DNA from: Bigelowiella natans CCMP2755
Lineage: Eukaryota; Protista; Cercozoa
NCBI GenBank assembly: GCA_000320545.1
Contig: ADNK01001402.1
Location: 1-43,721 of the forward strand
Reading direction: 5' to 3'
Length of the DNA stretch: 43,721 nt
Of this stretch, positions 19,893-29,548 are shown one piece after another. A model generated the notes under the pieces. The model made no database searches. It was not told where the DNA came from and saw only the letters and a list, made by a program, of their open reading frames with translations. Position numbers and translations under genes: made by a program. How positions within the stretch are numbered: the first letter of the stretch is position 1; each line of letters begins with the position of its first letter.

Positions 19893-22800
19893 CTCTAATG
19901 TTTGTTTGAGTAGAGAATCTATAAATTCAGAAAGTTCATCATTTCTTCTTTGTCGTAAAATTTCCATTCAGTCTCCCGTGACATCGAGAGGAAATAAAAA
20001 ATTACAAAAACGAAAACTAGAACATTATAGAATATTGTCTCGAGGATGCATTATTTAACGCCCCTCCCCCTCATTTCCATCTTCCTCACACATATACAAA
20101 ATATTTATCATAAGATACTGAAACTTGAAATACGATTATTCATCTATGCCTTGATAATGTCCATACCTGCCTCTCTCTCGCGCGCACACACATTACACAC
20201 AAACACACACACGCAATTATGACCATACAGCCCTAGCTTTGATCCAAGCTCGGCGGACAACGTGGAGTTGGCTCAGGAGCTCGCCCAGCTGCCGTTTCGT
20301 CGGGTTCAGCCGGACATCCAGCGGGTGATCTTGGGCCTCAAGTTCCTCATAGAATTGGGAGTATTCAGGAGCGCAGCGGACGATTCATCGGACACTGATC
20401 TGAAACTGAAAAAGTGCTCTCATGCCTGAGAAATTGATGGAAATTGCATGCATGAGGGTGGTGGAGAACGATCCGCGGTGTGTGCCTCGAGTTATTCCTC
20501 TTATTGAGCTTGCTTGAGTTGCATTTGTTTGGCTGTTTACCTGCTTCGCCAGCCTTTCTCAAGAGCAATTGCATTGATTCCAGGTATCACAAGGAGCAGG
20601 AGACTGACGACCCAGACTACGTTTCGCCAGCCCAAAGCAGGCAAGTTGTAATGGCGCACCGTAAGCAACAGGGTTTTTCCGGAATGTCACGCAAGATCCT
20701 AGAGGGCTCTGTTATGCTATCGACACTGCGCGCTAGTCAGAAAAGAAGCACCGCCAAACGGAAGGCGGCCCCCAACCGCGATACGAACATGCTGAAGTCG
20801 CTGGCTGCTGGGGTGTTTCCCCTGAAGGAGCTTGCAATCCCACATCGAACCAGAACCCACTACCACGCACTTCTCACGTCCTCCATTGCTGACCTCAGCT
20901 GGAATGCCTCGAGGCTCGAGGCGCACGCATTCTTCCACCTATGCATCTTTATGAACCGCAAGGTGTCCAAGTATTACGACCGAATGCATGCTGGAGGAGG
21001 AGGAGGAAGGCATGGTCAGTCAATGGTAAACGCAGATGCTAATTCCGAGCAGAAGAATACCGGTGCCTGGCGCGGTGCATCTAGGATAAACTTCGAACCT
21101 GAGAGTCCAGAAAACCCGGAGTTGCGAGGGATGAAGTATATGAGCTGGCTCCTGCTCGAGATTAGTCGGCTGCGGAGGACAGAAGACTCTTTTCACGTGG
21201 ACTCTGATACTGGGTAGCATTATAGATAATATCATGTCTTCCAGAGAGAGGGGGGAGAGTAGCAGCATGCCGTGTGGTTCAGTCGGTGCACCTCATTTCA
21301 ATGTAATAAGAAAGCAGTGCAGCAAGCTCAGAAGCTTGTGCGAGGGCTTGAGTCGCCGAAGAATGACTGGATCAATGCTACTTATGCCCCCCCCCCCCCC
21401 CCCCCAATAAAAGGTACATGTCGACGTACCACTTGATGGAGAGCGGACTCGACCGAATCCAGCTTGAAAATCTGTCCTCCGCCGCGATGTACACGTCGAA
21501 TTGGCTTGAAAGAAGCTGGCGCGCAATCGACTTGCTGCCTGTCGTTTGGCAGAACAACACGGTGGACTGGAGCTCCCTTCTCCCGATCAAAAGCCAGATG
21601 GAGTTCGCCGCAGCGCACATTGACTTTTTCTCGCTCGCAGGGGTAACGGTCGCGCAGCTCAATTCATCGCAGTTCTACGCTGCCGTGGAGCTTGATAGCT
21701 TGGGCATCGTGCTGAGGAACGGTAGCTCTGAGCTGGGCTACTACTCGCAACTTCCGTGGCGAAACAGCAGCGAATCGCAATCTCTTCTAGAGTCATCTGG
21801 CTCACTCCCCACCACCACCACGCACTCTGCAGCTTCCTATGACCCCCGCAACATGACGTGGTTTCAACAGGCCCTTGGTAGCGACGGTCAAGTATGGGCG
21901 CCAATGCGACAACTTGATCTTCGGAACATCACTGGGATCAGCCTGTCAAGGAGCCTGAGGGTCAACGACTCACTCGTGGGAGCGATGGCGGTCGATCTGG
22001 ACCTCCGGAAACTGTGCGACTTGCTCTCCTCGCGCATCGAGCTGTACGACAAGAGCATGGTGTTTGTGAGCGACCGCTCGTGGAACGTTCTCGCTGCCTC
22101 CTTAGACCGGCTGAGTTGTCACGATGGGGAGCTGACAGGGTTAGGGAAGACTCTTCGGGCAGATAGTACTCTTCTGAGCGCCACCAAGGAGTAATCGTTG
22201 TTAACTAACTAGAAGCATTGGTTATCGTTCCTCTCTCTTCTCGTCCTTCTCTCTTCAACTTCTCCCTCCCCTACGTGCATAATCTTTAACCCGACCATAG
22301 GTACCTGGTTCGGGAGTTTCCATCGGGTCTTTCGACCTCCTCCTCCAGCACGATGTTCATGGACGGAAAGTCGCTAACTTACAGGCAATTCAGCAACATC
22401 GATTACCCGGGGAATCGCTATCCGATAGTCGCAACGGTGGCAAACTTCGAGGTTTTGGGTCTTGAGCTAAGCATTGTTGTTTCGAGCAGCCCCGAGCCTT
22501 TCACAGACCAGGTTACGATACTGCTGCTGCTGATGATGATGATGATACTGAGAATGTCATGATAACCATAGTTCTCCCACCCTCTTTCTCCCCCCCTCTC
22601 ACAATCAACAAAAACGAACGAAAAGCCACTCATTTGGTTGCATTTGTTTGTCCCGACTCCCCCCCTGAATGATAGCTGGTGTCAATCGGCTGGATAGCGC
22701 TCTCCACAGGGCTGATCAGCATAATCATTGTCCTCCTCATATCCTGTTTCCACTGCGGAGAGAACCAGAAGTTCGGTGAGGAGGCGTGGTACGGTGGTGC

Positions 22801-23337
22801 AGCAGCCCGCAGCAGCGCTGCCAACAACGGCCTGCTGCACTCCTGGATGAAGATCTTCAAGACCACCATCGGCGAGAAAAAGAAAGATGGTTTCGATCCC
22901 GACATCAGGCGCAAGTATGAGAATTTGATCGGCATGACGGATTGGGGGGGAGGGGGAGGGGGAGGAGGAGGAGGAGGAGGAGGAGGAGGAGGAGGAAGAT
23001 GCGGTGGCAGAAGGCGTTGGCGTTATATAATATCATCAAACGCAGGACACTCACACACTCACTCACTCACTCACTCACTAATTTCCTGTTTCTCACATGC
23101 GCGTTTGTAAGGTTTAAGGAGTTCAGGCGAGCTCGAAAGCACCTCCATGATAAGCTGCAAGCGGTGTTGGTGCAAGAAGAACTCGCTGTGGTAGAGGCTG
23201 AGGTGGGTAGGATAGTAGCGTCTCTCTCTTTTGTGAAACTCATCATACGATGATTGTGCAAGAAGAGAATGTTGGTCTTGGCACAGAGCCATTGGTGTTT
23301 GAACAATTTTTGTTGCTTTTAGATTTAATGTGGCCCC

Positions 23338-28700: not shown

Positions 28701-29548
28701 AGCTCTTCGTGGGCGAGGCGTGGCACGACATTATGTATGCCGGGATCTCCGTCTACGACGATTTTGGTGTTGCAGCCTACTTCATCTCATTCATTCTGAT
28801 CGTGACGATTATCTTCGCAAACCTGCTCATCGGCCTTGTCCTCGATGAATTCTCCATCAACTACGAAGAGCACATCCAAAAGCCAGAATCAGAGCACCAT
28901 AGTACCCCTCGTGACAAGAAACGGCGCAATTCCTGGTGGGAAGGGGTGAAGAATAAGCGAAAGGTTATTCCAAAGGCGCTATCCCGCTATACGAACACCT
29001 CCAAGAACTACTGGAACTCCGTGGGAATCGGCGGTCCTTCAAAATCCGTTCCCCTTACCTTCGACCGGAAGATGCCAAGCAGACCGAAGCTACAAACAGT
29101 TCCGAGCCGCATCCCGAGCGAAATTACGCCAAGTTCGGTTCACCTACATGCACCTGAGGAAGGTGGCACTTCCAGGAAATTTGATTTCTCGAGAATCATA
29201 TCACATGAATCAGACTACAACGTGCTCGGGATCAACACACCAAAAAGATCTGCAACTTCGCACCCCATCCCGGATGCTAAAAAGGCCAAACAGGCTCCTC
29301 TCGGCGCCGCAGTGAAACTAAGAAGAACTGTGGCTCTGGGCAATAGTCTCCAAGAAGCCCGTATGACCTCCGAAGGCAACATGAACAGACCTTCACCGCG
29401 CCTTGCTGTGAGCGACGGTAGCCCAGTGCTGGCTGAAACTGTCTACAAAACGAGAAAGATTTCAATTGTTCCAGACAAAAAATCGGCAAACGCCAGAGAG
29501 CGGCAAGACAATGCCAAGAATCAGTTCAGAAATCATGGCACTGCGTGA
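18174..29548 (+). CDS. Two-pore channel (2x6TM with EF-hand linker) fused N-terminally to two membrane-anchored dCache-like domains; multi-exon
   Basis: Phase-compatible GT-AG junctions link exons 21414-22190, 22301-22511, 22676-22914, 23112-23202, 23400-23543, 23813-23946, 24432-24611, 24843-25103, 25261-25595, 25795-26127, 26391-27838 and 28106-29548 (TGA). Cache1 shows YDPRNMTWF...LVGAMAVDLDL...ADSTLLSATKEYL...GLELSIVVSS. Cache2 shows LSTFLQG...DVVTTEGILAASS...AVDSENDVTQKAINYL. The TPC part has two 6TM units, pore loops VGTGENF and FVGEAW, and an EF-hand-like DFNGSSTVNVED. The upstream exons (18174-21213) are also phase-compatible, but the 5' end is less certain. Confidence 0.82.

What the first reader, a model, noticed from the sequence alone, without database searches (positions are those of the whole stretch)
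21414..29548. Two-pore channel fused to two tandem lumenal/extracellular dCache sensor domains: candidate ligand-gated TPC
Seen: eleven consecutive splice junctions from 21414 to 28106 are phase-compatible. The key junction 26127/26391 (G|TC) rebuilds an uninterrupted hydrophobic helix, DLRVFSFIVSMFLLVILNYMMYR, joining Cache2 to the channel exon. The product reads Cache1-TM-basic cytosolic linker-TM-Cache2-TM-TPC (6TM, EF-hand pair, 6TM)-tail. Both Cache regions are rich in N-x-S/T sequons, consistent with a non-cytosolic location. Established: dCache_1 domains are small-molecule sensors of bacterial receptors, and in animals occur in the separate Cav auxiliary subunits alpha2delta and CACHD1; characterised plant and animal TPCs have no such N-terminal sensors. 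Inference: a single-chain receptor-channel in which lumenal or extracellular metabolites gate a TPC. I do not know of a described family with this architecture.
Basis: partly seen in the sequence, partly recalled or inferred. Interest (0 to 1): 0.88.

Follow-up and report, generated by a model that had tools for sequence, protein, structure and literature searches.

The report
Cache sensor domains fused to calcium channel
This alga-like protist gene joins two bacterial-type "Cache" small-molecule sensor domains to a two-repeat calcium-channel-like pore in one protein, and the same undescribed design recurs in many other protists, so it is a candidate channel opened directly by outside chemicals.

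Summary
The core of the finding holds. A multi-exon + strand gene (at least 21414-29548) encodes dCache-1, TM, a 55-aa linker, TM, dCache-2, TM, about 135 cytosolic residues, a 6-TM repeat, an EF-hand pair, a second 6-TM repeat and a basic tail.

The key splice 26127/26391 is backed by comparison, not only by phase. The nearest relatives of the channel exon are proteins of 1600-2900 aa with the same order of parts. Four of them are single uninterrupted ORFs on metagenomic contigs. Three align without a gap across the rebuilt helix.

Family HMMs hit both window Cache modules (64.8 and 51.6 bits; shuffles reach 4.4 at most). The AlphaFold2 model of exon 1 matches only bacterial dCache ligand-binding domains.

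The family occurs in Rhizaria (Paulinella, foraminifera, Leptophrys, a cercozoan MAG), Mesostigma and Rhodelphis. The window comes from a chlorarachniophyte. I found no paper describing this architecture.

Caveats:
- The membrane helix expected before Cache-1 is not found, so the 5' end is unresolved.
- The 1517-nt intron joining Cache-1 to Cache-2 is only inferred.
- I rebuilt 8 introns, not 11.
- The pore is CaV-like (Glu in both filters) rather than typical of TPCs.
- Ligand gating is inference.

The parts
20313..20366 (+). Candidate N-terminal cytosolic motif (DIQRVILGLKFLIELGVF). It hints that the gene extends upstream of 21414.
   Evidence: The pattern R[LVI][LVIF]x[ACGVL]L[RKS]FL[LVI] occurs once in the six-frame translation of the window, here. 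It also occurs in the N-termini of P0002, P0007, P0013 and P0087. The pattern was designed after the fact, so this is weak evidence.
21414..22190 (+). Exon with the Cache-1 stalk helix and the membrane-distal PDC module. The acceptor is at 21413|21414. An in-frame ATG lies at 21418.
   Evidence: Pfam MCP-like_PDC_1, E 4.9e-7, 30.6 bits against a cut-off of 27. AF2 pLDDT 79.6 and pTM 0.78. The Foldseek top 50 are all bacterial dCache LBDs. A C16 tract gives 72% pyrimidine upstream of the AG.
22301..22511 (+). Exon with the rest of Cache-1 (membrane-proximal module).
   Evidence: Phase-compatible GT-AG junction. The Cache-1 family HMM aligns to model residues 2-354 at 64.8 bits.
22676..22914 (+). 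Exon with TM2 (IALSTGLISIIIVLLISCF) and a 55-aa cytosolic linker.
   Evidence: 22676 is the only stop-free acceptor. Hydropathy 2.63. Linkers in homologues are 55-266 aa and not conserved.
22915..24431 (+). Inferred long intron (1517 nt) full of microsatellites. This is the weakest link of the model.
   Evidence: Donor CAA|GTATGA, acceptor CTAG|CAT, 82% pyrimidine upstream of the acceptor. GGA, CACT, AT, CA, AGT and TC arrays lie inside it. There is no RNA evidence.
24432..24611 (+). Exon with TM3 (ISSAVAFALVAIVFFIAII) and the start of the Cache-2 stalk helix. An alternative start codon lies at 24421.
24843..25103 (+). Cache-2 exon. The 5' boundary is ambiguous.
   Evidence: The Cache-2 family HMM aligns to model residues 449-818 at 51.6 bits.
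25180..25595 (+). Cache-2 exon (core of the distal module). Both boundaries have alternatives.
25795..26127 (+). Cache-2 exon (proximal module, conserved NRPFGSPETSV motif) plus the first half of TM4.
   Evidence: tblastn of P0005 residues 1179-1254 hits 25866-26126. See also the alignments.
26128..26390 (+). Key intron (263 nt, GTAACG...ACAG). Reading through it hits a TGA at 26136-26138.
26391..27838 (+). Exon with the second half of TM4, a cytosolic region of about 135 aa, 6-TM repeat I (filter GTGENF) and the EF-hand pair.
   Evidence: Pfam Ion_trans 4.3e-14 and EF-hand_7 at 21.7 bits, below the cut-off of 30. The closest solved chain is human TPC2, 8e-7. Family alignment.
28106..29548 (+). 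Exon with 6-TM repeat II (filter VGEAWHDIM, S4 with one Arg), a basic tail of about 220 aa and the stop codon.
   Evidence: Pfam Ion_trans 1.6e-27. The closest solved chains are CaV1.2 at 8.5e-33, against plant TPC1 at 1.3e-8. Family alignment.

Best explanation
The locus encodes one long membrane protein of a conserved, so far undescribed family.

Shown here:
- The order of parts is dCache-1, TM2, a short cytosolic linker, TM3, dCache-2, TM4, about 135 cytosolic residues, 6-TM repeat I, an EF-hand pair, 6-TM repeat II and a basic tail.
- Both Cache modules are true dCache_1-type sensor folds.
- The same layout exists as single ORFs in other eukaryotes.

Inferred:
- Two chains pair, as in two-pore channels, to form a four-repeat pore.
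- Each chain gives one Glu from each P-loop (TGEN and GEAW, both conserved in the family). The dimer would then carry a CaV-like ring of four Glu and should conduct Ca2+.
- The Cache modules face the outside or an organelle lumen. This rests on TM parity downstream, the sequon excess, and the way all bacterial dCache sensors sit.
- A small ligand binding in the distal pocket, most plausibly of Cache-1, which keeps the family's W/W/D pocket framework, shifts the flanking helices. TM4 runs straight into the cytosolic segment before S1 and biases opening.
- Voltage sensing is weak: two Arg in S4 of repeat I and one in repeat II. The first EF-hand loop could give Ca2+ feedback.

My odds:
- Cache-2 and the channel in one chain: about 0.9.
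- Cache-1 in the same chain: about 0.7.
- Ligand binding controls gating: about 0.45.
For: Closest relatives:
- The closest relatives of exon 26393-27940 in 1.84 billion representatives are proteins of 1600-2900 aa with the channel at their C-terminus.
- Pfam finds dCache_1 above its cut-off, two Ion_trans domains and an EF-hand in P0002 and P0005.
- P0005, P0002, P0003 and P0008 are uninterrupted ORFs of 6.2-7.5 kb. P0008 lies next to Sec3, Bap31, PRP4 and SKA2, and P0003 next to WD40 and protein-kinase genes, so these are cellular eukaryotes.
- Transcript-derived members come from Rhodelphis and Leptophrys (TransDecoder/Trinity-style record names), and probably from Nonionella and Bolivina.

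The spliced window model:
- It aligns in single HMMER domains across residue 804/805: P0005 718-1249, P0002 728-1365, P0013 695-1536. The alignment across TM4 has no gap.
- tblastn of P0005 hits Cache-1, Cache-2, repeat I and repeat II in that order.
- Family HMMs built without the window score 64.8 bits on Cache-1 and 51.6 bits on Cache-2. Each module scores best with the HMM of its own position. Shuffles reach 4.4 bits at most.

Fold:
- The AF2 model of exon 1 (pLDDT 79.6) and of a full Cache-2 module of P0005 (pLDDT 86.9) match only dCache ligand-binding domains such as Tlp3, PctC, TlpQ and PctD.
- The Cache profile hits PctA at 6.7e-13 and CACHD1 at 4.5e-13 by sequence.

Other points:
- 51 of 152 representatives carry Cache modules, and the four pre-channel helices are conserved.
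- Sequons: 14 in the Cache regions against 2 in the cytosolic parts.
- The filter Glu residues are conserved across the family and S4 is poor in charge.
- Repeat II is closest to CaV1.2.
Against: - No RNA evidence exists for any junction in this organism.
- The helix expected before Cache-1 (TM1 in every two-Cache homologue) is not cleanly encoded upstream of 21414. Without it or a signal peptide, Cache-1 cannot reach the non-cytosolic side.
- The Cache-1 to Cache-2 link needs a 1517-nt intron, six times longer than the next longest. ATG 24421 followed directly by TM3 would make a plausible separate start.
- The only database protein from this locus is a 491-aa ORF call that starts at M26 of the channel exon and reads through the intron at 27839.
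- Neither Cache module keeps the amino-acid motif Y-x4-R-x-W...Y...D (PMC8915833). Cache-2 has Tyr for the family Trp and Gln for the family Asp.
- The acceptor at 26391 has no pyrimidine tract.
- No ligand, localisation or current has been measured for any member.
Confidence: 0.55

Rival explanations
1. The architecture is the same, but the Cache modules are not gating sensors. They act as a built-in equivalent of the alpha2delta/CACHD1 subunits of CaV channels. They would support folding, trafficking, surface stability or contact with outside partners, while gating is driven by Ca2+ (EF-hand), lipids or residual voltage sensing.
For: The Cache profile hits CACHD1 as strongly as it hits bacterial sensors. 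The pore is CaV-like. In animals the Cache-bearing alpha2delta mainly affects trafficking (PMC8915833, text). Cache-2 of the window has lost the family's pocket Trp and Asp.
Against: There is no VWA domain. Each module is flanked by two membrane helices, as in bacterial transmembrane sensors, not anchored like alpha2delta. Cache-1 keeps the pocket framework, and both modules are conserved as full dCache folds across distant lineages.
Confidence: 0.25
2. The locus makes two products. One is an upstream Cache-1/TM2 protein, or a decaying remnant that has lost its first helix. The other is a single-Cache channel that starts at ATG 24421 (MQSSISSAVAF..., a signal anchor equal to TM3).
For: TM1 is missing. 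The gap is 1517 nt and rich in repeats. Single-Cache channels exist in the family: P0012 from Leptophrys at 1272 aa, P0019, P0083 and P0108. The topology of a product starting at TM3 is self-consistent.
Against: Cache-1 is intact over three exons with good splice sites and a confident fold. 24432 has the strongest pyrimidine tract of all the acceptors. The six closest channel relatives (P0002-P0007) all carry two modules. Each window module matches the homologue module of its own position best.
Confidence: 0.2
3. The channel is expressed alone from a start inside 26391-26470, and the Cache exons belong to a different gene.
For: The public ORF call P0001 begins at the Met of MMQRRG. In-frame Met codons exist after the junction.
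Against: P0001 also reads through an intron, so it is a mechanical call. The 263-nt gap must rebuild a helix that aligns without a gap to homologues encoded by continuous ORFs. A start at 26396 would leave half a membrane helix at the N-terminus.
Confidence: 0.05

Closest known systems
Two-pore channels (plant TPC1, animal TPC1/2)
   Same: One chain carries two 6-TM Ion_trans repeats with an EF-hand pair in the cytosolic linker, and is presumed to dimerise. Repeat I is closest to human TPC2 among solved structures.
   Different: An N-terminal extension of 800 aa or more carries two dCache modules and three to four extra helices. The filters are TGEN and GEAW, with Glu in both, instead of the Asn-rich TPC filters (the latter from my own knowledge). 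Repeat II is far closer to CaV1.2 (8.5e-33) than to AtTPC1 (1.3e-8). Localisation is unknown.
CaV alpha1 with its Cache-bearing auxiliary subunits alpha2delta / CACHD1
   Same: A Ca2+-channel-type pore (the GEAWxxIM P-loop resembles CaV repeat IV) is combined with two dCache_1 modules on the non-cytosolic side. The Cache profile hits CACHD1 at 4.5e-13.
   Different: Here the Cache modules are covalently part of the pore-forming chain, are each flanked by membrane helices, and carry no VWA insertion. The pore has two repeats per chain, not four.
Bacterial dCache_1 transmembrane sensors (PctA/B/C, Tlp3, Mlp24/37, TlpQ, CqsR)
   Same: The layout is TM, long stalk helix, two PDC modules, TM. These are the best fold and sequence matches.
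   Different: The output is an ion channel instead of a kinase, MCP or cyclase module. Two sensor modules sit in tandem in one chain. The amino-acid motif is not intact.
Ionotropic glutamate receptors (analogy only)
   Same: A ligand-binding domain of bacterial type is fused to a pore of the voltage-gated-like superfamily, giving a direct chemoreceptor channel (my own knowledge).
   Different: The sensor fold is unrelated (periplasmic-binding-protein type against Cache), the pore type differs, and there is no homology to the sensor part.

Membership tests
Two-pore channel (TPC) | Two tandem 6-TM voltage-gated-type repeats in one polypeptide | tested here: met
   Two Ion_trans hits, 4.3e-14 and 1.6e-27. 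They join in frame by 27838/28106.
Two-pore channel (TPC) | EF-hand pair in the linker between the repeats (plant TPC1 type) | tested here: inconclusive
   EF-hand_7 scores 21.7 bits, below the cut-off of 30, in the window. The homologue P0004 scores 41.7 bits, above it. Loop 1 (DFNGSSTVNVED) is near canonical and loop 2 is degenerate, read directly from the sequence.
Two-pore channel (TPC) | Sequence closer to TPCs than to other voltage-gated-type channels | tested here: inconclusive
   Repeat I is closest to hTPC2 (8e-7). Repeat II is closest to CaV1.2 (8.5e-33 for the whole chain, best single stretch 45 bits) against AtTPC1 at 37 bits. No rooted tree with named references was possible.
Two-pore channel (TPC) | TPC-type selectivity filters without an acidic ring | tested here: not met
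   The filters are GTGENF and VGEAWHD, and the Glu is conserved across the Cache-fused family. The TPC filter consensus is from my own knowledge.
dCache_1 / Cache superfamily sensor | Significant profile match | tested here: met
   Window exon 1: MCP-like_PDC_1 above the cut-off. Homologues P0002 and P0005: dCache_1 above the cut-off. Family HMMs: 64.8 and 51.6 bits on the two window modules. The profile hits PctA, Mlp24 and CACHD1.
dCache_1 / Cache superfamily sensor | Double-PDC fold with a long N-terminal stalk helix | tested here: met
   AF2 and Foldseek for window Cache-1 (exon 1 only) and for the full Cache-2 module of P0005. The window Cache-2 could not be folded because spliced sequences cannot be handed to the tool.
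dCache_1 / Cache superfamily sensor | Extracytosolic module flanked by two membrane helices | tested here: inconclusive
   Cache-2 is flanked by TM3 and TM4. Cache-1 has TM2 after it, but no TM1 was found before it.
dCache_1AA amino-acid sensors | AA_motif Y-x4-R-x-W ... Y ... D (PMC8915833) | tested here: not met
   Cache-1 reads YDPRNMTW, with Met at the Arg position and no Tyr at the second-part position, while the Asp is kept. Cache-2 lacks both the Trp and the Asp.
alpha2delta / CACHD1 | VWA domain inserted in a dCache_1 domain; a protein separate from the pore subunit | tested here: not met
   No VWA hit in the window pieces or in nine homologues. The Cache modules are in the same chain as the pore.

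The most novel reading that the evidence does not exclude
These proteins are eukaryotic ionotropic chemoreceptors. An extracellular small molecule bound by a bacterial-type dCache module would directly open a Ca2+-selective, CaV-like two-repeat channel. That would give protists such as chlorarachniophytes, Paulinella, foraminifera, vampyrellids, Rhodelphis and Mesostigma a one-protein path from chemical cue to Ca2+ signal. It would also be a covalent counterpart, possibly a relative, of the alpha2delta-CaV partnership.
Probability: 0.35. Interest if true: 0.9.

Novelty: new variant of a known kind. Interest (0 to 1): 0.78.

Why it matters
Cache domains are the main extracellular small-molecule sensors of bacteria. 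In eukaryotes they are known chiefly from alpha2delta and CACHD1, the separate helper subunits of calcium channels.

A published survey states that every eukaryotic dCache_1 protein carries a VWA insertion (PMC8915833). This family has none, and its Cache modules are wired directly into a pore-forming chain.

If ligand binding gates the pore, this would be a new class of ligand-gated channel in the voltage-gated superfamily. It would also be a simple chemosensory Ca2+ entry route in several protist lineages, including shell-building foraminifera.

The family also bears on two older questions: how Cache domains and CaV-type pores came to work together, and what two-repeat intermediates of four-repeat channels looked like.

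On the practical side, Pfam cut-offs miss the Cache modules in most members from named species, and the public protein for this locus is a fragment. The family is therefore invisible to routine surveys of domain architecture.

Tried and rejected
- Word-index search with the Cache region of P0005 found only P0005 itself, because the modules are too diverged for shared 5-mers.
- The same search with the window channel exon found only the window's own 491-aa ORF call. No transcripts from sister species turned up.
- An exact look-up of that ORF on contigs found nothing on record.
- A metagenome scan with exon 1 found no relative.
- An HMM of the homologues' N-terminal regions against all upstream + strand open stretches gave nothing significant.
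- I tried to link the 253-codon open stretch 20456-21214 to the TM1-like stretch at 21186-21236 by a GT/GC-AG intron. No option exists.
- I tried to choose among alternative splice sites inside Cache-2 by family-HMM score. All options score 56-60 bits, so this is not decisive. An exhaustive combination script timed out.
- Aligning the three Cache-2 exons as separate fragments gave overlapping, unreliable placements, and I disregarded the result.
- I considered a giant-virus origin for the intron-free homologues and rejected it, because P0008's neighbours are Sec3, Bap31, PRP4 and SKA2, and P0003's are WD40 and kinase genes.
- A rooted tree with named TPC and CaV references could not be built, because no named reference sequences were available to the scripts.
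Full report
**What is in the sequence**

The window is eukaryotic, with GT-AG introns and microsatellites. Its SCO1 gene is 77% identical to that of Chlorarachnion reptans and 73% identical to that of Amorphochlora. The organism is therefore a chlorarachniophyte (Rhizaria). That it is Bigelowiella natans is my guess only.

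On the + strand between 21414 and 29548, Pfam finds three things:
- An MCP-like first PDC sensor domain in the first large exon: E 4.9e-7, 30.6 bits against a cut-off of 27.
- Ion_trans plus a weak EF-hand pair in 26360-27940.
- A second Ion_trans in 27983-29545.

**Gene model**

I enumerated GT-AG pairs that keep the frame open. This gave nine exons:
- 21414/21418-22190
- 22301-22511
- 22676-22914
- 24432-24611
- 24843-25103
- 25180-25595
- 25795-26127
- 26391-27838
- 28106-29548

They translate to 1767 residues without a stop. All twelve tandem-repeat arrays in the region fall in predicted introns or upstream of the gene, and none falls in an exon.
- Cache-1 (residues 1-334)
- TM (335-353)
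- 55-aa linker
- TM (409-427)
- Cache-2 (428-799)
- TM (800-818, split by the 26127/26391 junction)
- about 135 cytosolic residues
- repeat I
- EF-hand linker
- repeat II
- tail of about 220 aa

I need eight introns, not eleven junctions. Three junctions inside Cache-2 have equally plausible alternatives, and homology cannot rank them.

**Is the fusion real?**

The decisive evidence is comparative. A full HMMER scan of 1.84 billion representative proteins with the channel exon returned the window's own ORF call first. It is a 491-aa fragment that reads through an intron. The next hits, at about 30% identity, are proteins of 1600-2900 aa with the channel at the C-terminal end.

- Pfam finds dCache_1 above its cut-off, two Ion_trans domains and an EF-hand in P0002 and P0005, with weaker Cache hits in P0003 and P0004.
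- P0005, P0002, P0003 and P0008 are uninterrupted ORFs of 6.2-7.5 kb on metagenomic contigs.
- P0008 lies next to Sec3, Bap31, PRP4 and SKA2. P0003 lies next to WD40 and protein-kinase genes. The contigs therefore come from intron-poor cellular eukaryotes, not viruses.

In those genomes no splicing prediction is needed for the fusion.

The spliced window model aligns to the homologues in single HMMER domains that run across the key junction: P0005 718-1249, P0002 728-1365, P0013 695-1536. The rebuilt helix ...RVFSFI|VSMFLLVILNYMMY lines up without a gap with the fourth pre-channel helix of P0005, P0002 and P0008. tblastn of P0005 hits Cache-1, Cache-2, repeat I and repeat II of the window in that order.

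**Are both regions Cache?**

- I built HMMs from the first and second modules of 17 homologues, leaving the window out. They score 64.8 bits on window residues 2-354 and 51.6 bits on residues 449-818. Each window module scores best with the HMM of its own position. Two hundred shuffles reach at most 4.4 bits.
- An AlphaFold2 model of exon 1, using 35 homologue modules as the alignment, has pLDDT 79.6 and pTM 0.78. It shows a 44-residue stalk helix followed by an alpha/beta PDC module.
- Its 50 best Foldseek matches in the PDB are all bacterial dCache ligand-binding domains, such as Tlp3 (2e-8), PctC, Mlp24, CqsR and PctA.
- A full second module (P0005 residues 890-1252) folds with pLDDT 86.9 into a complete double-PDC domain. 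It matches TlpQ, PctD, a dCache diguanylate cyclase, TlpA and Tlp3.
- By sequence, the module profile hits PctA (6.7e-13), a sensor diguanylate cyclase (4e-13) and human CACHD1 (4.5e-13). It hits alpha2delta-1 only weakly.

Its assignment rests on the HMM and on the alignment.

**The family**

A conserved plan is seen in more than 25 long representatives:
- TM1
- module 1, about 340-450 aa
- TM2
- variable charged linker, 55-266 aa
- TM3
- module 2, about 370 aa
- TM4
- about 140 aa
- channel

Of the 152 proteins held (150 representatives and two cluster members), 51 carry at least one such module ahead of the channel. Seventeen of these were used to build the HMMs. Some members have a single module.

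Named sources:
- Paulinella micropora (four paralogues)
- Cercozoa sp. M6MM
- the foraminifera Nonionella stella and Bolivina argentea
- the vampyrellid Leptophrys vorax
- Mesostigma viride
- Rhodelphis marinus

The Rhodelphis and Leptophrys records carry TransDecoder/Trinity-style names, so they are transcript-derived. The foraminiferal ones probably are too. In these named species Pfam mostly fails to call the Cache part at its cut-offs. That probably explains why the architecture has escaped notice.

**The pore**

Repeat I is nearest to human TPC2 among solved chains (8e-7). Repeat II is much nearer to CaV1.2 (8.5e-33) than to plant TPC1 (1.3e-8).

The P-loops read GTGENF and VGEAWHDIM. The Glu in each is conserved across the Cache-fused family, with consensus TGE(N)Y and GE(G/A)WH(E/D)(V/I)MY. 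A dimer would therefore carry four Glu, as CaV channels do.

S4 of repeat I has two Arg. S4 of repeat II has one, and it lacks the K/R-x-x-R cluster that most homologues keep. This agrees with another first-stage note on this window (s1-417662).

**Topology and sequons**

Cache-1 has 8 N-x-S/T sequons and Cache-2 has 6. The 524 residues assigned to the cytosol have 2. Counting helices back from the channel, whose N-terminus must be cytosolic, puts both modules on the non-cytosolic side.

**What does not fit**

In every two-module homologue a first helix (TM1) ends 1-4 residues before a conserved W-x-x-S/T, and about 11-14 residues before the position aligned to the window's Met 21418. The window model starts exactly there, without a helix.

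The site 21413|21414 looks like a true acceptor:
- A C16 tract lies just upstream.
- The 40 nt upstream are 72% pyrimidine, a level that only 5% of AG sites in the window reach.

An upstream exon is therefore expected. I found three phase-compatible candidates, and none is convincing:
- A CT-rich stretch ending at 19480.
- ...VCLELFLLLSLLELHLFGCL... ending at 20583.
- ...TLFTWTLILGSIIDNIM... at 21165-21271.

A short motif at 20313-20366 resembles an N-terminal motif of four homologues. It occurs only once in the six-frame translation of the window. This hints that the gene begins at or before about 20220. An HMM of the homologues' N-termini found nothing significant.

The link between Cache-1 and Cache-2 needs a 1517-nt intron. 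Its acceptor has the best pyrimidine tract of all (82%). However, ATG 24421 followed directly by TM3 would also make a self-consistent single-Cache channel, and such channels exist in the family. I put the two-module single chain at about 0.7 and the Cache-2 to channel link at about 0.9.

**Ligand pocket**

The amino-acid motif of dCache_1AA is Y121, R126, W128, Y144 and D173 (PMC8915833). It is not intact.
- Cache-1 reads YDPRNMTW, with Met at the Arg position and no Tyr at the Y144 position. It keeps the family's Trp, Trp and Asp (VGAMAVDLDL).
- Cache-2 has RYY in place of the family WY, and Gln in place of the family Asp.

If ligand sensing occurs, Cache-1 is the better candidate, and the ligand is probably not a plain amino acid. 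This is inference from the alignment.

**Literature**

Six full-text searches, together with reading of the two main Cache surveys and a review of diatom Ca2+ channels, found no description of a Cache domain fused to a pore-forming channel.
- PMC4822843 lists "ion channels" for Cache only in the sense of the alpha2delta domains.
- PMC8915833 states that all eukaryotic dCache_1 proteins carry a VWA insertion, which this family does not.
- The library holds open-access papers only, so an earlier description elsewhere cannot be excluded.
- JGI's automatic annotation names both domains for P0007, so the co-occurrence is visible in databases.

**Verdict**

It is one member of a widespread, conserved and apparently undescribed family: two-repeat channels with CaV-like pores and one or two covalently attached dCache sensor modules. 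The functional reading, a ligand-gated Ca2+ channel, is plausible but unproven. The 5' end of this particular gene is unresolved.

Noticed in passing
window 11440-17292 (-): A large multi-exon KDM5/JARID-type histone demethylase gene lies on the minus strand upstream of the channel gene. Pfam finds JmjC at 1.3e-39, PHD and PLU-1.
   Followed up: no
window 33945-34838 (-): A SCO1/SenC copper chaperone gene. Its closest relatives are Chlorarachnion reptans (77%) and Amorphochlora amoebiformis (73%), which places the window in the chlorarachniophytes.
   Followed up: yes
window 20456-21214 (+): A stop-free stretch of 253 codons lies directly upstream of the Cache-1 exon. It has no Pfam hit and no significant match to the homologues' N-termini. 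It may be 5' coding sequence of the channel gene or something unrelated.
   Followed up: partly
window 21388-21405: A homopolymer run of C (called the C16 tract in this report) sits 8 nt before the AG of the 21414 acceptor. If its length is mis-assembled, the upstream reading frames change.
   Followed up: partly
window 26468-27940 (+), protein P0001: The only public protein from this locus is a 491-aa ORF call. It starts at an internal Met and reads through the intron at 27839 to a stop at 27941. The public gene model is therefore fragmentary.
   Followed up: yes
window 28430-28480 (S4 of repeat II): The window protein lacks the K/R-x-x-R cluster that most family members keep after the first S4 arginine. 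It is even less charged than its relatives.
   Followed up: partly
P0016, P0018, P0051, P0012, P0015: In members from named species, Pfam scores for the Cache part fall below the curated cut-offs or are absent, although family HMMs score them at 35-300 bits. Routine domain surveys would miss the architecture.
   Followed up: yes
L001 11179-12148 (-); L004 17337-18509 (-): Two of the intron-free homologues lie next to protein kinases, and the one on L001 is fused to ankyrin repeats. This may be coincidence.
   Followed up: no
window 36151-37053 (+): A leucine-rich-repeat exon (LRR_6, 3.6e-15) lies downstream. Another first-stage note reports an ankyrin exon array at 38037-39923.
   Followed up: no
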